From the NCBI RefSeq assembly GCF_003918875.1, contig NW_025767191.1, forward strand, positions 2,914,001-2,978,000: a stretch of 64,000 nucleotides of DNA. Reading direction: 5' to 3'. A program made the translations under genes and the position numbers. The DNA is from Haliotis rubra. Its lineage: Eukaryota. The notes under the pieces are model-generated. The model worked only from the letters and a program-made list of their open reading frames with translations. It was not told the DNA's origin and ran no database searches. This document shows, piece by piece, positions 3,911 through 22,270 of this stretch (its first letter is position 1; each line of letters starts with the position of its first letter).

Positions 3911-5697
3911 TGGTATCATCACTATTTCATAGTGATTCATTAACACCTGCTCTGTCATTTATCGCATGGGTTTTTCTGGTCCAGACTCAAACAGCTGTAA
4001 TAATGCTGACATAAATTTATACTCAAGATATAGACACAATTGTGCATTCGACTCGAATGTTTATGGATGTGGAAAGGGGTTTGTTGCTTCTATTTCTATT
4101 ATCATATGAGATAATCTAGTCATTAATCCTTAAGAGGTTTCTCTATTCCGACAATTCCGTTTTTAACAAATACTAAAATACTAAATTGTAAGGTATTTAG
4201 AGAAAAGATTTTTCATAGGTAAAATGCGCAGTTAACACACATATTTCAGATTTTAAAGTGGCTTGGTGACATATTATTGGATTTTGTTTTGATATAATTT
4301 GCATAACATGCATATAAAAAATACATTATGTATTACTCAGAAAGATAAAGGGGACATAGCTGTGAAAATTATATGAATGGATAACAGGTTGTACATGTAT
4401 ATTTGTGGCTGCGAACGTTTCATATGTATTATCTTATACCAGGGCTCAAGTAACATATGTAAGAGTCAGTATTACACATTCACAGTAAAATATAGATTCT
4501 AGCACTGTTGTTGGGTTGAGTCCATCCGGGGTTCGAACCCAAACCCATTGACACCGTCGCGTCTGTTTCATATTTAGATATATGCTTAAAGTTATAGAGT
4601 GGTCACTCTACATTAGACTGTATGAAAATGGGAACGACATTCTAACTGTTAACCTTTTCCTTTCTTTCAGCTCTAGCCTGTGTACACATTACAACGTTTG
4701 TGCTACAATTCCGGCATTCTTTTCCTTCGAAAGATATAAATGTAATGCGAATTTTGACAATAGTCACAAGATTTCTGGCCTCAGTGAAGTTTGCCACGCG
4801 TTTTCTGATGGACAAGTGCAGTACCTTTCCAAACTGGACACATCTGTGAAACAACATTTCTGCTGCAATTCCCTATTTTGACTTTTACCATAATCCCCGT
4901 GTTTTCAGGTTAACAACTGACTTTCTTTTCCCATACTTGTGACGGGTACCACCGATGAACAGGATATGTGGGTGGGAACTGTCGCTCTTAATTAATGATG
5001 GTGTTCATGATAATCTCCTATAACAATGGTTGTTGCTGTTCAGTAACAGTTCACAGGTTTCATAATCACCCTGCAACGCGAACTCGCAAATAAACCCGCT
5101 AACTAATGGATAGTGAGGTTCATAATGCATTCGTTATCTCGGTAATGCCAATTACTGAACGCTATTGTTCCATGTACTCATTAGTAAATAATAAGGATAT
5201 CAGTATGAATCGTGTGTTTTCGGTAGCTGTGTACGCTAGGCAATGTCTTATAACGGACGATTTCTAATGGCTGACAACAGTGTATGAAATAAGGCCCGTC
5301 CGACCGCCCGAGACGGGTTAGATTTCAGACGGACGGTCGAGATTTACAGCTAGCCATCCCGATGGTCTGGTAAAAATTTAGATGTTATATACATAGTGGA
5401 TACTAAACGACCTTCCGTGTAATACCATTTTTATTAAACGAGTTAATGATTTGAAGCTAAATCTTTCACGAGTTTAATAAAAATGGTATTTCACAGAAGC
5501 GAGTTTAGTATTCTGTTTATTACTCTCCAACATAAATTGATCGAAACTGGTTACAGTGTGATGACTCTCATGTCAATTTTCCTCGAGTCAAGCAAGGTCT
5601 AATTCATGGATCCGCGCATATTGATTGACAGCTGGTATCAACCAATCAGAAAAAAGCTTTGTTGTCCTTAGTTACCGTGCGGTGAAAAGCGCAGAAA

Positions 5698-8600
5698 ATG
5701 GTATTACGATGCGCGTGGGGGACATGCAATGCTGACGAACGTTACCCTGAAAGACTGGAAGGAGTTTTTTTCGTCCGATTTCCAACTGTCAAACGGAATG
5801 AAGAAAAATGCAAGCGATGGATTAAAGCTTGCGGTTGTCCTCATTAGCAGCTAAATTTATCCAGAATAAATCAACACAAAGCTAAGGTAAAAATTATTGC
5901 ACTTAAATAATATTTATAAAAAAGGCATACTTAATTTTATACAGAATGTTCACTGTTATAACACGAGATCGGAGCAATAATATATCTGGAGAATTCATTT
6001 GTAACCATTTCCGGCAAAGGAAGTTCGATCTCAATTCATTTGATTCGACGTAATTGTTTAGGCCTGATACGTAATTAGATATAGATAGCTGGAAAATGGA
6101 CATGTATTTCTGTTGGTCTTATCTGATAGTATTTTGTTTTATTCCAGCATTTTGTAGGAGGAACAGGACCGAGCAGAGAATATCCTGACCCAGTGCCTGC
6201 AGACGGAGCCTGCCCAAAGCCAGTCAGAAAACCACCCCTGAAACGCCCAAGCCAGTACACTCCCTGCATATCGGATAAAAAGCAGAGGTCATCTCTTGTC
6301 GGAGAGAATATTGACATGTGTGTATTTAAAAACTTACACAAATCAAACTAGATGCATTCTTCAAATTCAATAATGGAAAATACATATATACCGTAATCAT
6401 AATTGTGGGATAATTATTAATATTTCTGGAAATGTATGTATGCAAATTTATTTTAAATAACTTCAATCAAATTTTAGGTTTCATTGCTATTTCTATGTCT
6501 TTCATATCTTTTTTCAGAGTGCCCAGAGTTTTCATTATCCCCTTATTCACTGTAGATGTATGTTTATTTTCATTATGTAGTGTAGTCTGTTCTCAGAGAG
6601 AATACTGACTTGTATACGTTTCACAAATTACACACATCAGAGTAGATTCATTCATGTTTTTTAATGATGGAAAAATACATGTAAATAATATTCATAATGA
6701 CAATAAATAATAAACATCATCATAGTCATGTCAAACATTATATATTCGCTTTTTTCAGACTAAACACAGGCAAGCCATCCACCCAGTCGACTGCTTCAGT
6801 TCAGATATTGTTACCCAATGACCAAGCAGAAAACAAGTCCACTGACTTCCTGATCAACACATCTACACAGACTGATGAAACATGTATGTATATATGGAGA
6901 TTCTGTGTTCATTTATTCCTCGGTGGTTGCATTCTTTAGGTAGGATGCCGCATGATCTCTGTAAAACATGGCTAGTTTCATTAACATTGACTGCATGAAA
7001 ACAATGTCGGGAGTTATTCTCTCCACATGCATGTCCAGTTGAGTGAACACAATAAACTCACAAAACCTGCACCCAGTAACCATCAACTGACCTTGTACTT
7101 GTGCGTAGTGATGGTGAGATCTTTTCAAAGAAGTTACACCATTTTCCTTTTTAAGGAAAAAGTCTAAATCTTCACAAGCATTGTCAGTGGTCATGTTGCG
7201 TGCTGAGTAGGGACATTTGATCTCAACAATCCCACTTTCACCATTGTCACAAATCTTGCTATCAGGTGTTGCTCCCAAAAATGAAAACTCATTGTTTACA
7301 ACAAACCCGCATTCATGAAAATGTCTGTCTGGATATTTCTGATGGTACCTTGCCTTAGCATCTTTTTCATGTTTCTTCCCATATTCTATCGATTGTGCTT
7401 TTATATTTCTTCTAGTGAAAATAGAGTTCAAGAAACCATGATTTGGCCTTTTTTTCTGGACAAAACCTTTCCAAAACTTGATGCAGTTAGACGTTTCCTG
7501 CGTTCATCAAACCAGAGTTCATTTGACTGACTCTGTGTTTTCATTTCAAGAGATTTGGGATCCTTACAGATTGTATCTTCATCATTTAGATGAGCAAATT
7601 CCTGGGTAAGCTTCACTGGTGGAAGCAAGATAACACTGGTGTTCCCATATATGTGTGTAGTTGGTGTTGCATTCTTGATGTGTTTGATCTGAAATTATAA
7701 ATAAATCATTCAAATATTTTGTCGTTTCAGGGATATCAGCAATGGACATACTAGCTCTGGCAGCAGAAAAACATGATTTGAAGCAACAATTACAAGACAA
7801 GTCAAGAGAAATAAGAGAGTTGAACATCAAAGTGGCATCACATGAGAAGACAATATAGGAATTACAGAGAGAGCTTCAACAATCATCATTATTTTCCATA
7901 GATGTTGTGATCACCGGGGGTAAAAAAATCAAAAACTTATTCAAACACTATACAGGTGTTACATATGTGAGATTTCTCACACTACTTACATTTCTGCTAC
8001 CCCAAGGAGAGGACATTGATTATTCATCAGGGAGAAAAGACATCAAGAGACTTAAACCTCAGGATGCATTATTGCTTACTCTCTGTCGGTTAAGGCATGG
8101 GTTTGGACTTAAAGACATTGCAGTTCGCTTTTCAGCAGGCATCATTTTCAACACATGGCTTGATCTGTTATATTTCAAGGTAAGGTAGATTCCAATATGG
8201 CCACACAGGGATGATATAATACAACATATGCCTGAAAAATATCGTAGAGACTATCCAACAACATTAATTATCATTGATGGTTCAGAAGTCAAAACACAGA
8301 CCCCATGTGCTGTAAGTTTGCAAAGTCAAGTCTACAGTGATTACAAGTCCTCTTCTACTCTTAAGGGTTTGATTGGATGTGATCCAAATGGAAGCTAAAT
8401 GTTTGTTTCAGAACTATTTACTGGTTCAATATCTGACAAAGCAATCACTGAACAGTCATTAAGTCAATGAAAGAAATTGGACACATTAATGAAGGTGATG
8501 GCATCATGGTTGACAAAGGTTTTTCTATCAAGAATGAAGTTGTAAAACTAGGTTTGAAACTGAATATACCTCCAAAAGGAAAGACAGGAAAACAATTCAA

Positions 8601-8790
8601 CATGGGAGAAAATGCATGTACAGAAAAAGTGGCAAAGCACAGAGTTCACATTGGGAGACTTATTAACAAGGTGAAACAATATAAATTATTGTCAAATTGT
8701 GTTCCAACATCTCTATTCTCAAGGATAAACAAGATTTGATCTGTTTGTTGCCACCTGACATTATTTTAGGATGTTTTTGTTAAGTACTGG
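5698..8790 (+). pseudogene. ISL2EU transposase (THAP + coiled coil + HTH + DDE_Tnp_4); exons 5698-5886, 6148-6287, 6759-6883, 7731-~8790
   Basis: MVLRCAWGTCNAD...RFP...WIKACG / HFVGGTGP (THAP); KHYTG, LLLTLCRLRHG, IIIDGSE, YSDYKS, FTGSISD, IMVDKGF, RVHIGR. Splice phases are consistent. Several in-frame stops, and the third catalytic Glu appears replaced by Gly. Confidence 0.85.
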
Positions 8791-10238
8791 TGCATATCTA
8801 AGTTGTTCAATGAGGTCAAGCTACTACTGTATACAGCAACTCGTAATAGAACAAAATTTCAAACTCTTCTGAAATGTTTTTAAGTTAGTTGCACCTCTTT
8901 GACATAGATATGTAGATATATACCTGATAAGATAGTGCAGATCCAATTGGCACATCTCCCATAGGAGTTTGCACCGAAGGCAAATCATGTTGTGCTGTTC
9001 TATGCAGGAGTGGTGTGCCCTGTAGAGTTTGAAGACTTGCCATATCAACCCTTGGTAGCCTGAAATACACAGATATACATACAGATCATATACAAACAAA
9101 TCATCTTACAGTTGTGTTTGTAATATGAATTACACATCATTAAAAATGCAGATTTTCTATCATGTATAGATAATTCCTTCATTCTGTTACATAAGGGCAG
9201 TTATCATTCTTAACTTGTAATCAAGTTAAAATGTACATATGTTTCATGGATATCTTGAATTATCAATTTTAGCAAAATTTCTGATGAAATAAGAATAAAA
9301 CTATACTTGTAATTCATGTCGGTGTGGCATTGTATTGGCTTCCGCTTGCGTTGTTCAGTTGGTCTTGCAACCGCAACCTGACTGATAGGCACTGGCAAGA
9401 TTTTGTCTCCCCTTGGCTTGTTCCATTGTTGTGGCATGGATGTGGAACTCAAATCAGATGGAATTTCTTTGAAGTCGTGGAGCTTGAATCCCTGGAATGT
9501 CTTGATCAGACCTATTATATGGGAACACTTCCCACTTAATCTGAAAGAGAAATAGCAAAGATAAAATTTATTTAGCAGATTATGAGTAGATTTTACCTTG
9601 TTTACTTGATACTCAGTCGACTGGTTCTAATAAATAATGCCTTGATCATACAAATGTTCTAACCTAATATTTAAGATTTTCTTCAAGCATGGATTTATTG
9701 GGAAAATGCTGGACCAAAAATTGTGGTATATTTGCATTAATTCACTTTGACAATTTTATTATTAGAAATGACTAAAACTTCATAAACAACATTTGATTTA
9801 GGGCCTCTCAATAATTAAAACCAAACGGTATTTTGACATTGACAAGTCTGGCATCTACGTTCTAGACCCTTTCAAGATTGGCTGTACTATGCATCACAAT
9901 AAATGTAAATCTTACGCACACATTTTCGTAACAGGTATAAAATCATCTGCGAAAATAGCAACTTACCCAGCTTTACAAGAGCAATAAGCATATTTGATTC
10001 GGTCGACATCAAGGTCAAGTGACAGTCGATGAGGCGAGTTGTTTTTCCTGAGTGATGGCCAACACTTGGCGGATACGGTCGGAAACTGAAGTGTCACCTC
10101 ATGAATGTAGCCTTGCTGGTAATAATTAAGTCCCTTTTGCATGCTCTTAGTCGATATTTGATCAGCAATCTGTAAAAAGGACACAGAAAACTTTTCAGGA
10201 ATGCATGCGAGACAATTGCTTTGCTCAGCGGCGGCCAT
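6913..10238 (-). pseudogene. ISL2EU accessory gene: SWIM zinc finger + YqaJ (lambda-exonuclease-like) nuclease; exons 10238-9967, 9540-9307, 9059-8924, 7688-6913
   Basis: CSCKAG/LSGKCSH (SWIM), STSMPQQWNKPRG, QSQSNELWFDERRKRLTASSFG, YGKKHE, FLGATPD, EIKCPY, HYAQVQGQL. GT-AG junctions are in phase; one frameshift in the A-run near 7450. Confidence 0.88.
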
Positions 10239-12829
10239 TTTGTTAGAAAGCGTGGGGTGCCTCGCGACAGTATCCAAGGGGCGGGGCTTAGCGAAGATGC
10301 GCGGATCCATGAATACTATTGCGACAGAGGCATTTGCATTGTGACGTCATAACTGTAACCATTATGACGTCATATGTCTAGCGGTATTACACTAGTGTAA
10401 TATTGCTCCCGCCCCTGGTATATTACCATAAGACCCATAAATATATTACACTGCAGTATCTCCCACGGGTGAGTAATAAATCTGAGTCATATATTGGTAT
10501 CTGGTCTGGTTAAATCCATTTTGGACTGGTAACATTTTGAAGTTACCAGCCCTGGTGTCTGGCTGGGGTTTTGGCTTATTTCATACACTGCTGACAGATC
10601 TCACTCAGCTTTGGACGCAAGGTCTCTAACCTCAGAGGACAATTTCTTCTGAAACAAAATTGCTGGCAGAGTTAAAGGCTTCATTAAAAGAAATACATAC
10701 AGGTGGCAGGATATTTTATAATTCAGGCAAATTTCAGTCTCATTGCAACTCATAGCCCTCTCTACCGCATACACTATTCTGAGAACATCGTATACAGGTC
10801 TAGTCAAAGCGACATTTCGTAATCGTTGACCAACCAGTGAAATGATCGGAAAGACGTTGAAATGACATACTCGGAAAGCCTCTTGTTGTCGAGCTTTACC
10901 TCACAAGTTTCTTCCCAGGATGTGGATTCTCTGTTTCAAATTGAAACTTTAACAAAAGAACATTCTCTAATGCCTTATTGATGGCTGAGGGGGCGTGGCA
11001 GAACTTCAACGAGCAATGGCATTTTCTTCCATTTTCATGTATTTCCTCACTGAAGCGAGGGATAGATGAATGAGAGTTGGAGGAATCAGTCGTACATCCC
11101 GTAACTGTAGCTCGTAATATTACCACTAAATTTGAAAGATATACGCGTCATTTGAAAAAATGATATCCCGAGCGTCACCTTCCCAATACAGTAAGCGACA
11201 CTCCAGTTGGATGAAATGTCGATCTGACGTGACCTGTAACAGGATGTCGTCGAATCTCAGTCAGAACTATGATCTTATTTTAATGAGGATGGGCAAATTC
11301 ATACCCGTCCAGTCTGTTTACACGATGTGGCTGAATTTTGCAAAACCTGCCATTTGTTTGACAAACCGAATCAGAAAACACGCCATACAATTAAAGGCAT
11401 ATCAAGTTTCTGAACTATCCGTTTGTGACCTACGACATTAATATACGTCACACTTGAGTAAAGGGTAGAGATTTGGCACCCCTATTTCTGGGGAACGATT
11501 CCATGGCGAGGGGTTAATTATAGGTCATTTTCAGTTTGCAACTTATCAAAGTGCCAAGTAGCGGATGCATTGTCGTTCCTTGCCTTAGCCATGATGTTAT
11601 TTGTTGAATCCCAAGCTGAAACTAAAAAGTAAACTGGAAATTAGTCCGTAAAAGAACTAGGTTATTTTAACGCTGCAGTCAGCAATGTGGCAGCGGTGTG
11701 TAAAATAACCAGCCAATCTTGTGATCAACAGCATGCGCATCGATCTAAGCAATGGGCGATCATTTTGTTCCGAAGGGTGATAACTCTCCTTTTGAAATGC
11801 TGTAAGCGATAGTCCAACTTCTCGCTTCCGGTCTGGTTCCAGACTCAATGTGCGCTCCGACAAATCGCTACATGTAAAGACAGAGCTCACGCTTTTGCCC
11901 TGCTGCACCTTGATTGAGAAACGATCATTTACGACGAAAAAGCTTTGACTCATACATGTTTTGAGGTGATATTTTGTTTACAAAGCATCGTTTGTTTAAT
12001 TTCCAAGTGCAATGCGAATTGACACGCTAGGAGATAACGGGGAAAACGCCATGAAAAATCGGTATACTGTCATGACATTTTCTACCACAGAACACGAGAC
12101 AGTGTAACTCTCGGGTGTCATAGCATCAATGAAATAATGAAACCTCACTTCATCAGTCCATATGTTATTTCCAAAGACAATTACTCAACCCCCAGTCAAT
12201 GGTTGCTGCATTCACATCTAACAAATAGTTCTCAAATACTATCACAGACCTCAATGTAATAAAATCGAAAATGCAGCCAGCGGGCATCCTCTGGAAGGCC
12301 TTTATCGCCTATAATTATTCCACATCCTAACAATTGAATAAATACCGTGTAGAATGAAACATAAATATAAAAATTACGTTTTGATCAACAGTTCCTCACA
12401 CATCTAATTTCATTTTTTTTAAATTCTGACACAATATTTTTAAAGTATTCTGAATCTATACTCAGCGTCATTAATGAAGTGTCAAGGTATTGGTAACACT
12501 ATTTCTTAAAAGTTGTAAAACTTCGTTTTTGTTTGAAATCTATACAACTGAATGCTTTACAAACGTTCTTAACAGTGTGGAAAAACACCTGAGGCCGTTG
12601 AAATGACACTACGTTCTTTAACGTCCGATGCATTCTGTTGCAAATGGCACATTCTTTATTCAAATTGTCAATATGGAAATCTACCTGCCTCTTAATGTCA
12701 ATGATTTGTATGTGCAAGTCGCCCTATCATGGAAAGTGGAAGACAATACACATGTATTGATGGGTTTTTCACTGCCGTTCACTGTTCAGTACCTGATTGA
12801 AATCGCAGCTTAAAATGAGACGTTTTTGA

Positions 12830-21070: not shown

Positions 21071-21214
21071 AAAAACACATCAGTACGAATTCAAAATTAG
21101 ATAGGCACTGTATTAAATCATTACAGAAACGGACATAATAAGCGGATCAAAAACATTTTTTGTGTACAATATCTTGATATATCAATGAATAACGTTTGCT
21201 GTCCATTCAGACCC

Positions 21215-22270
21215 TTGAAGTATCTAGTGTGACCACCACGAGCGGCAATAACTGTAGCACAGCGTCTATGCATGGAGTGCACCAATCGATTGATGAAGCC
21301 CATTGGCACCTTGAACCACACTCTGAGAAAGACCTGGCGCAATAAATCGGCTGTGTTCGGCCTTGGTATGACATTATTCAGTCTCCACTGAATTTCATCC
21401 CAAAGATGTTCAATTTGGTTTAAATCATGACTAAGGGCTGGCCACTGCATAATGTTGACACCGTTCTGCTGTAGGAAGTCCCGTGTAGCTCTGGCAGTAT
21501 GGACCCGGGCGTTATCATGCTGGAAAATGTTGTTCGGGTGACGTGCGAAATGTGGTATGACGTGGGGTCTGAGAGTTTGGTCGATGTAGGACCAAGGTTC
21601 CGGCACACCACAAGACCCACTCTCTGGGTCAGGCCTATTCCACCCCATACCATGATGCTTGCACCTACCCATGAGTCTCTTCCCATAACACATTGGTCTG
21701 AGTAAACGTAGTCGCCATATTCTTGTTCTGCCATCTGCAGTTGATACGCAGTACTGACTCATCTGTGAACAGAACAGGTCGCGATTGCTTGTATCGCCAG
21801 GTTTGGTGTTGTAGGGCAAACTGTAGACGTTCACTCCGATGACGAGGGGTGAGGATAGGTCCACGGTAAGGTCTACGGCAATGGAGGTTCCCGCTGTTAA
21901 GACGTCAGCGTACTGTATCAGTACTGATTGGTCTTCCGTGTGCTCCCACTGTCTGGCGTGCTGTTTCGATTGCCTGCATGAAGGGATTCTGTACATGCTG
22001 TCGCACAGCATGGCAGTCTTGTCGTCTTGTGGTCACCCTTGGTCTGCCAGTACGGGGGCGATCATTTGTGGTGTTGGTGCCCCGGAAACATTGCTGTAGC
22101 CTGTAGATGGTCCGAACGTTGACCTGGAAGTGATTGGCAACAGCTTATGCAGAGTGACCAGCTTCCTAGCGCCTGGTTCCTCTGAGCTGTCGTGAGTCGT
22201 GGCATCCTGCTGACGTTGTAATGTGAATGTTTCAACCAGGTTTGAGGGTGCATTTTATAGGGCTGGTCCT
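21215..22270 (-). mobile_element. Tc1-family transposon, decayed transposase
   Basis: MPRLTTAQRNQALG (ATG 22205) ... SIMVWGGI ... FQHDNARVH ... WPALSHDLNQIEHLW ... ARGGHTRY; multiple frameshifts. Confidence 0.88.

What the first reader, a model, noticed from the sequence alone, without database searches (positions are those of the whole stretch)
5698..10238. Mutually interleaved antisense gene pair inside an ISL2EU transposon
Seen: the transposase gene (+) and the SWIM-YqaJ gene (-) start at opposite ends of the element and cross over. The YqaJ catalytic exon (7688-6913) lies inside transposase intron 3 (6884-7730), and the DDE catalytic exon (7731-~8790) lies inside YqaJ intron 3 (8923-7689). 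All six junctions are GT-AG and phase-compatible. Known: ISL2EU elements pair a DDE transposase with a YqaJ nuclease. Inference: the reciprocal nesting forces about 1.9 kb of sense/antisense pre-mRNA overlap. That could act as a built-in control (polymerase collision or dsRNA silencing) and makes the two genes hard to separate by deletion. I do not know whether this architecture has been described.
Basis: partly seen in the sequence, partly recalled or inferred. Interest (0 to 1): 0.85.

Follow-up and report, generated by a model that had tools for sequence, protein, structure and literature searches.

The report
Interleaved antisense genes, dead ISL2EU transposon
The window holds a dead copy of an ISL2EU DNA transposon whose two opposite-strand genes each keep their main exon inside the other's last intron; this odd layout is real and is shared by a whole clade of these transposons in fish, hemichordates, echinoderms and molluscs.

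Summary
Window 5609-10307 is one ISL2EU transposon with 15-nt TIRs that start GG and an AT target duplication. It carries a THAP-HTH-DDE transposase gene (+, four exons) and a SWIM-like/YqaJ gene (-, four exons). The YqaJ exon (7688-6913) lies in transposase intron 3. The HTH-DDE exon (7731-~8790) lies in YqaJ-gene intron 3. All six junctions are GT-AG and in phase, and they fall at the same alignment columns as NCBI gene models in four other species.

This is not a copy-specific inversion. The same order occurs in Fundulus, Glandiceps, Anneissia, Argopecten, Ylistrum and Haliotis. In both protein trees the interleaved loci form one clade (SH-aLRT 96 and 99), nested among ordinary ISL2EU elements. 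Those have two intronless, convergent, non-overlapping ORFs (36 of 43 classifiable surveyed loci). Processed contigs show the predicted splicing.

The window copy itself is dead: at least six stops, frameshifts, and a lost THAP cysteine and catalytic Glu.

The proposed regulatory role (polymerase collision, dsRNA) is untested. The papers I could read describe only "two ORFs". I rate it a new variant of a known kind, of moderate interest.

The parts
5607..5608 (.). left target-site duplication AT
   Evidence: The sequence reads ...TTC AT|GGATCC at the left end and GGATCC|AT GAA... at the right end. An AT duplication is the one reported for ISL2EU (PMC4482050).
5609..5623 (+). left terminal inverted repeat GGATCCGCGCATATT
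   Evidence: the repeat finder pair I3 spans 5602-5622 and 10294-10314, 95% complementary. The repeat starts GG, as reported for ISL2EU.
5698..5886 (+). transposase exon 1: THAP zinc finger, with an in-frame stop codon starting at 5845 and a 9-nt deletion that removes the VCS of the C2CH motif
   Evidence: Pfam THAP E=0.033 on the window piece. Intact homologues score 27-29 bits, above the 23.9-bit cut-off. The donor is AAG|GT, at the same column as in P0376 and P0441.
6148..6317 (+). transposase exon 2 (end of THAP, HFVGG..., and a basic linker)
   Evidence: AG acceptor and GT donor, phase 2, aligned to exon 2 of P0376. A 74-78% identical duplicate of its 3' end plus the donor lies at 6586-6698, inside intron 2.
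6759..6883 (+). transposase exon 3 (variable linker ending ...QTDET)
   Evidence: The donor T|GT splits a Trp codon, as in L091, L092 and L093.
6913..7688 (-). YqaJ-gene exon 4 (YqaJ/lambda-exonuclease-like domain), lying wholly inside transposase intron 3; one frameshift near 7430
   Evidence: Pfam YqaJ 2.6e-13. The acceptor is TTTCAG|ATC. The junction column is the same as in P0258 and P0262. About 128 homologues have E<=1e-5.
7689..7730 (.). 42-nt spacer carrying the two opposed 3' splice sites back to back (CTGAAA...TTTCAG)
   Evidence: Read directly from the sequence. In Fundulus (L093) the corresponding spacer is about 68 nt.
7731..8790 (+). transposase exon 4 (coiled coil, HTH_Tnp_4, DDE_Tnp_4), lying wholly inside YqaJ-gene intron 3; five in-frame stops, a frameshift near 8465, a 15-nt deletion in the HTH, and catalytic E replaced by G. 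The 3' end is approximate.
   Evidence: Pfam HTH_Tnp_4 3.4e-9, DDE_Tnp_4 6.7e-8 and 2.6e-10. Alignment to P0374, P0376, P0441, P0369 and P0367.
8924..9059 (-). YqaJ-gene exon 3 (linker ending ...PIGSALSYQ)
   Evidence: AG acceptor and GT donor. The peptide aligns to exon 3 of P0258 and P0262, and to the antisense exon found in the 3' UTR of L089.
9307..9540 (-). YqaJ-gene exon 2 (second half of the SWIM-like finger, GKCSH, and a conserved linker)
   Evidence: tblastn matches in L001, L004, L087 and L093. The junction columns match P0258 and P0262.
9967..10238 (-). YqaJ-gene exon 1 (N-terminus and the CxC half of the SWIM-like finger)
   Evidence: The ATG is at 10238 and the donor is GG|GTAAGT. 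Pfam SWIM is sub-threshold on homologue P0265: 17.3 bits against a 19.6-bit cut-off.
10293..10307 (-). right terminal inverted repeat (one mismatch to the left one)
10308..10309 (.). right target-site duplication AT

Best explanation
Window 5609-10307 is an old, inactivated copy of an ISL2EU (PHIS/Harbinger-like) cut-and-paste DNA transposon.

It belongs to a distinct ISL2EU clade. In that clade the two element genes each have three introns, and their large 3'-terminal exons have changed places. The genes are the THAP-HTH-DDE transposase and the SWIM-like/YqaJ exonuclease-like protein.

Read in the direction of the YqaJ gene, the order is: SWIM exons (+), DDE exon (-), YqaJ exon (+), THAP exons (-). 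Each catalytic exon therefore sits in the last intron of the other gene.

In an intact element, expression needs promoters just inside both ends. It needs transcription of the central 1.9 kb or so in both directions. It also needs splicing on both strands, using two 3' splice sites that face each other across a spacer of about 40-70 nt.

Shown here:
- the anatomy
- its conservation across phyla
- its single origin inside ISL2EU
- processed (spliced) products

Inferred:
- Both proteins are needed for transposition, by analogy with two-gene PIF/Harbinger elements.
- The layout arose from an intronless convergent ancestor. One possible route is tandem duplication of the central YqaJ/DDE block followed by reciprocal loss.
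- The forced antisense overlap affects expression. The overlap includes about 140 nt of complementarity between the mature mRNAs, because each 3' UTR runs over the partner's exon 3.
For: Element borders, TIRs and target duplication.

Domains.

Exact exons, GT-AG sites and phases.

The same interleaved order occurs in these loci:
- L001, an ENA contig
- L003, Anneissia japonica, where NCBI's THAP..DDE model contains the YqaJ gene in an intron
- L004, Argopecten irradians, where NCBI's SWIM-YqaJ model P0258 contains the DDE gene
- L087, Haliotis cracherodii
- L091, Ylistrum balloti, where both NCBI models overlap each other
- L092, Glandiceps talaboti
- L093, Fundulus heteroclitus
- L084 and probably L016, metagenome contigs

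Junction columns are shared with the NCBI models, and the split Trp codon is conserved.

Survey of loci: 36 convergent, 7 interleaved plus 1 probable, 45 unclassifiable.

Convergent relatives are intronless: L022 has ORFs of 595 and 515 aa, L008 of 594 and 519 aa.

In the YqaJ tree the interleaved loci form one clade, SH-aLRT 96. In the DDE tree nine interleaved loci plus L089 form one clade, SH-aLRT 99. Its nearest relatives are the convergent L005, L051, L022 and L054.

Processed products:
- L089 and L090 carry a contiguous 517-aa THAP-HTH-DDE ORF with no YqaJ exon. It is followed by sequence colinear with the genome that carries an unspliced antisense YqaJ-gene exon 3 with its AG and GT.
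- L088 carries a contiguous 485-aa SWIM-YqaJ ORF and falls inside the interleaved clade.
Against: - The window copy is broken, so nothing can be said about expression in this genome.
- There is no second copy in the window from which to build a consensus.
- I could not check whether the Logan runs behind L088-L090 are RNA libraries. A retrocopy would look the same, although it too would need the predicted splicing.
- L088 sits at the unresolved base of the clade and could instead be an intronless relative.
- NCBI models may rest partly on protein homology rather than on RNA evidence.
- Both trees are rooted only at the midpoint, so "derived" is likely but not proven.
- The flanks here are C-AT-G, not the A-AT-T target reported for ISL2EU.
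Confidence: 0.9

Rival explanations
1. The crossing-over is private to this copy. An internal rearrangement of an ordinary tail-to-tail ISL2EU element produced it, and the GT-AG junctions are chance.
For: Most ISL2EU loci surveyed are tail-to-tail. This copy is decayed and carries an internal 294-nt-spaced duplication.
Against: The same order and the same junction columns occur in at least eight other loci from six named species in four phyla. Protein identity among them is only 40-60%. The interleaved loci form one clade in both gene trees.
Confidence: 0.02
2. The four coding blocks are separate genes (THAP-only, DDE-only, SWIM-only, YqaJ-only) that are not spliced together. The DDE and YqaJ blocks would then be a simple divergent pair.
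For: ORF-based gene callers, and some NCBI models, annotate the DDE block (260-370 aa) and the YqaJ block (209-255 aa) on their own. The DDE block of L001 begins with Met.
Against: In convergent relatives THAP-HTH-DDE and SWIM-YqaJ are each one continuous ORF. Splice sites and phases are conserved, including a split Trp codon. Full-length spliced NCBI models exist in many species. The contiguous 517-aa and 485-aa ORFs of L089 and L088 lie inside the interleaved clade.
Confidence: 0.05
3. The interleaving is a selected regulatory or anti-cheater device. Obligatory convergent transcription and mRNA complementarity would throttle or couple the expression of the two proteins. Alternatively, any internal deletion would kill both genes at once.
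For: The layout has persisted across phyla with very tight spacing. In Fundulus about 30 nt separate each stop codon from the partner's exon 3. In L089 the transposase 3' UTR covers the whole antisense exon 3 of the partner, about 142 nt.
Against: No expression or small-RNA data were available. Persistence can equally reflect a frozen accident that is hard to undo. Convergent ISL2EU lineages are more numerous in the survey, so interleaving is not needed for success.
Confidence: 0.2

Closest known systems
Canonical ISL2EU elements as described in the literature (PMC4482050, PMC4122938, PMC9179366) and as seen in L022 and L008
   Same: [quoted passage not shown] The two genes are on opposite strands and start at opposite ends.
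   Different: The canonical elements have two intronless ORFs that converge and end about 240-300 bp apart without overlap. Here each gene has three introns and the terminal exons are swapped, so the two genes are reciprocally nested.
PIF/Harbinger elements (same PHIS superfamily)
   Same: They are two-gene DNA transposons with a DDE_Tnp_4-type transposase plus an accessory protein.
   Different: Their accessory protein is Myb/SANT-like, not SWIM/YqaJ. Their target duplication is TWA. The papers read here report no reciprocal nesting.
Nested and interleaved host gene pairs in animal genomes (from my own knowledge, for example the genes-within-introns classes in Drosophila annotation)
   Same: Exons of one gene lie in an intron of a gene on the other strand.
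   Different: Those cases are nearly all one-way nesting of unrelated host genes. Here the nesting is reciprocal, it lies inside a mobile element of about 4.7 kb, it involves two functionally linked genes, and it is inherited as a unit across phyla.

Membership tests
ISL2EU group of the PHIS (PIF/Harbinger-ISL2EU-Spy) superfamily | Transposase with DDE_Tnp_4 core, HTH and N-terminal THAP | tested here: met
   Window pieces: HTH_Tnp_4 3.4e-9, DDE_Tnp_4 6.7e-8 and 2.6e-10, THAP weak at 0.033. Full-length homologues carry all three above the cut-offs.
ISL2EU group of the PHIS (PIF/Harbinger-ISL2EU-Spy) superfamily | [quoted passage not shown] | tested here: met
   YqaJ 2.6e-13 at 6913-7431 on the minus strand.
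ISL2EU group of the PHIS (PIF/Harbinger-ISL2EU-Spy) superfamily | 2-bp AT target-site duplication | tested here: met
   AT at 5607-5608 and at 10308-10309.
ISL2EU group of the PHIS (PIF/Harbinger-ISL2EU-Spy) superfamily | TIRs that begin with GG | tested here: met
   GGATCCGCGCAT[A/C]TT at both ends.
ISL2EU group of the PHIS (PIF/Harbinger-ISL2EU-Spy) superfamily | Extended target A|AT|T | tested here: not met
   The flanks are C-AT-G, giving the palindrome TTCATGAA. This is a preference in the literature, not a strict rule, and only one site was available.
ISL2EU group of the PHIS (PIF/Harbinger-ISL2EU-Spy) superfamily | Transposase groups with reference ISL2EU transposases rather than with Harbinger or Spy | not testable with these tools
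Relatives found here all share the two-gene THAP-DDE plus YqaJ make-up.
Autonomous (potentially active) ISL2EU copy | Both ORFs intact | tested here: not met
   The transposase has six in-frame stops, a frameshift, a lost THAP Cys and catalytic E replaced by G. The YqaJ exon has a frameshift.
Interleaved ISL2EU clade (defined here) | DDE exon antisense inside the last intron of the SWIM-YqaJ gene, and YqaJ exon antisense inside the last intron of the transposase gene | tested here: met
   for the window. for eight further loci.
Interleaved ISL2EU clade (defined here) | Phylogenetic placement with the other interleaved loci in both gene trees | tested here: met
   SH-aLRT 96 in the YqaJ tree and 99 in the DDE tree.

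The most novel reading that the evidence does not exclude
The reciprocal nesting is an adaptive design of this transposon clade. Both pre-mRNAs must cross the same 1.9 kb in opposite directions, and each mature mRNA carries the antisense of the partner's exon 3 in its 3' UTR. The element would therefore make its own dsRNA trigger, which would limit its activity or couple the dosage of the two proteins. In addition, internal deletions could not produce derivatives that keep only one gene.
Probability: 0.18. Interest if true: 0.8.

Novelty: new variant of a known kind. Interest (0 to 1): 0.6.

Why it matters
ISL2EU elements are described in the papers I could read simply as "two ORFs". This work shows that one widespread clade has a different and very unusual gene layout: two genes reciprocally nested on opposite strands inside an element of 4-5 kb. 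The clade occurs in a teleost, a hemichordate, a crinoid, bivalves and a gastropod.

- **Annotation.** Gene finders mostly call only the two big exons, or make chimeras with host genes. One example is the "syntaxin-binding protein 1b" isoforms of Syngnathoides that carry SWIM-YqaJ.
- **Transposon classification.** ORF-based rules for calling a copy autonomous will miss these elements.
- **A natural test system.** The element is compact and portable. It could be used to study convergent transcription, splicing from two opposed 3' splice sites 40-70 nt apart, and sense/antisense mRNA pairing.
- **Evolution.** It raises a concrete question of how two intronless convergent genes became interleaved.

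Tried and rejected
- I looked for other copies of the element, or an empty target site, inside the window. There were none, so no within-genome consensus was possible.
- An Rfam scan of the window found nothing.
- The founding ISL2EU paper (Bao et al. 2009, PMC2727372) is not held. I therefore cannot exclude that consensus entries there already record the exon coordinates.
- Literature searches for ISL2EU together with introns or antisense, and for interleaved genes in transposons, found no description of this layout.
- L065 was first scored as interleaved. I rejected that. Its DDE fragments lie 2.6 kb away and another lies on the wrong strand, and it groups with convergent elements.
- My first splice model of the minus gene was off by one base at two junctions. 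I corrected it.
- A poly(A)-signal scan gave no consistent picture. In the window an AATAAA overlaps the YqaJ stop codon, but this is not conserved.
- A TIR search in other loci found a clear terminal pair only in L004 (7970-7990 and 13154-13174).
- No fetched contig looked human. The N run near 14.97-15.3 kb was left untouched. Broken genes were read only in pieces or with X at the breaks.
Full report
**What is in the window.**

The region is one transposon, 5609-10307 (4,699 bp).
- It has 15-nt terminal inverted repeats, GGATCCGCGCAT[A/C]TT.
- It is flanked by an AT duplication.
- These features, and the length, fit the published description of ISL2EU: AT duplication, TIRs starting GG, mean length about 4.84 kb, a THAP-HTH-DDE transposase and a YqaJ-domain protein (PMC4482050; PMC4122938; PMC9179366).
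- Pfam finds HTH_Tnp_4 and DDE_Tnp_4 on the plus strand (7907-8739), YqaJ on the minus strand (6913-7431), and a weak THAP at 5698-5826.
- There is no second copy in the window.

**Gene models.**

Plus gene exons are 5698-5886, 6148-6317, 6759-6883 and 7731-~8790. Minus gene exons are 10238-9967, 9540-9307, 9059-8924 and 7688-6913.
- Every intron is GT...AG and the phases fit.
- The YqaJ exon lies inside transposase intron 3 (6884-7730).
- The HTH-DDE exon lies inside YqaJ-gene intron 3 (8923-7689).
- The two 3' splice sites face each other across 42 nt (7689-7730, CTGAAA...TTTCAG).

**The copy is dead.**

Aligned to intact relatives, the transposase reading shows these defects:
- six in-frame stops, with codons starting at 5845, 7853, 8186, 8396, 8737 and 8767
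- a frameshift near 8465
- a 9-nt deletion that removes VCS from the THAP C2CH motif
- a 15-nt deletion in the HTH
- Gly in place of the catalytic Glu

The YqaJ exon has one frameshift near 7430. An internal 294-nt-spaced duplication copies the end of exon 2 into intron 2.

**Is the interleaving private to this copy? No.**

I searched with the intact 172-aa YqaJ piece and fetched genomic loci. The same order (SWIM exons, antisense DDE exon, YqaJ exon, antisense THAP exons) is present in:
- L001, an ENA contig
- Anneissia japonica, L003. NCBI's THAP..DDE model spans the YqaJ gene.
- Argopecten irradians, L004. NCBI's 478-aa SWIM-YqaJ model P0258 spans a DDE gene.
- Haliotis cracherodii, L087
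- Ylistrum balloti, L091. NCBI annotates both genes, overlapping each other.
- Glandiceps talaboti, L092
- Fundulus heteroclitus, L093. This is a compact copy inside a RECK intron.
- Metagenome contig L084, and probably L016

Three further results support the models:
- The NCBI models have four exons each.
- The window's junctions fall in the same alignment columns.
- Transposase intron 3 splits a conserved Trp codon, T|GT...AG|GG, in the window, L091, L092 and L093.

**Is it general to ISL2EU? No.**

A scan of metagenome contigs with a YqaJ alignment gave 80 loci. Over all 89 scored loci (these 80, eight loci fetched earlier and the window), the counts were:
- 36 have the plain convergent order.
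- 7 are interleaved and 1 is probably interleaved. One of the seven, L065, is an artefact; the window itself is among them.
- 45 cannot be classified.

Convergent elements such as L022 and L008 have two intronless ORFs, 594-595 aa and 515-519 aa.

The trees place the interleaved loci together:
- In the YqaJ tree the interleaved loci form one clade, SH-aLRT 96.
- In the DDE tree all nine interleaved loci form one clade, SH-aLRT 99. Its nearest relatives are the convergent L005, L051, L022 and L054.

The layout therefore arose once, most likely from an intronless convergent ancestor. Both trees are rooted only at the midpoint, so this direction is an inference.

**Evidence for splicing.**

*L089 and L090.* These Logan contigs come from two runs.
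- They carry a contiguous 517-aa THAP-HTH-DDE ORF that is 61% identical to the Ylistrum model and has no YqaJ exon.
- They sit deep inside the interleaved clade.
- Downstream of the stop the contig is colinear with genomic DNA. On its other strand it carries a complete, unspliced YqaJ-gene exon 3 with its AG and GT.
- Only a spliced transposase-strand RNA, or a retrocopy of one, fits this.
- It also shows that the mature transposase mRNA would contain about 142 nt antisense to the partner mRNA.

*L088.*
- It has a contiguous 485-aa SWIM-YqaJ ORF and lies in the interleaved clade.
- Its position is at the unresolved base of that clade.

*Limits and other models.*
- I could not verify that these runs are RNA libraries.
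- Full-length spliced models exist in RefSeq for many molluscs, an amphioxus hybrid and a hemichordate.

**How it most likely works.**

In an intact element, promoters lie just inside each end. In the window a CCAAT box lies upstream of the transposase ATG and a GC box upstream of the other ATG, read. They drive two primary transcripts that cross the central 1.9 kb in opposite directions. Each is spliced so that the partner's catalytic exon is removed as intron.

The following are inferences, not results:
- Both proteins are needed.
- Convergent transcription or RNA pairing modulates expression.
- The layout arose by duplication of the central block followed by reciprocal loss.

**Novelty.**

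The papers I could read describe only "two ORFs". The founding paper and Repbase could not be consulted. I rate this a new variant of a known kind, of moderate interest.

Noticed in passing
L002:1852-6765 (ENA ERZ26273167 contig): There is a head-to-tail array of six YqaJ ORFs, most of 247-254 aa (one cut short at 195 aa), with a period of about 814 bp. No DDE, SWIM or THAP lies nearby. It looks like the YqaJ exon amplified as a tandem gene array or satellite.
   Followed up: partly
P0126 / P0255 (Syngnathoides biaculeatus, XP_061672472.1 and XP_061672467.1): NCBI 'syntaxin-binding protein 1b' isoforms carry the SWIM and YqaJ parts of this transposon gene, fused to Sec1-family sequence. This is either a chimeric gene model or exonisation of an intronic ISL2EU copy.
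   Followed up: no
window:5271-5293 and 10575-10597; window:5400-5511: A 23-nt inverted repeat (91%) brackets the ISL2EU copy at about 300 bp on each side. A 53-nt-arm hairpin lies in the left flank. The ISL2EU copy may have inserted into another short TIR element.
   Followed up: partly
window:42467-43611: A 32-bp minisatellite with 35.8 copies at 95% match. It explains the GC-skew spike in the composition profile.
   Followed up: no
window:59831-60868 (+) and 21121-22011 (-): There are two Tc1/mariner-type transposase ORFs (DDE_3, HTH_Tnp_Tc3_2). The first is a full 345-aa ORF and the second looks truncated.
   Followed up: partly
window:27172-29310 (+): A 712-aa open reading frame with no Pfam match. 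It is Ser/Thr/Pro-rich and hydrophobic at its start, and may be a large terminal exon of a host gene.
   Followed up: partly
L003:4134-4259 (Anneissia japonica): The C-terminal part of the DDE domain lies on the opposite strand from the rest of the DDE exon. This indicates a copy-specific internal inversion in that crinoid copy.
   Followed up: no
L089:2110-2131: The poly(A)-signal-like A-rich end of the processed transposase contig is the complement of the polypyrimidine tract of the partner gene's intron 2 acceptor. One stretch may therefore serve both strands.
   Followed up: no
window:6292-6403 and 6586-6698: A diverged direct duplication (74-78% identity, spacing 294 nt) copies the 3' end of transposase exon 2 and its donor into intron 2.
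   Followed up: partly
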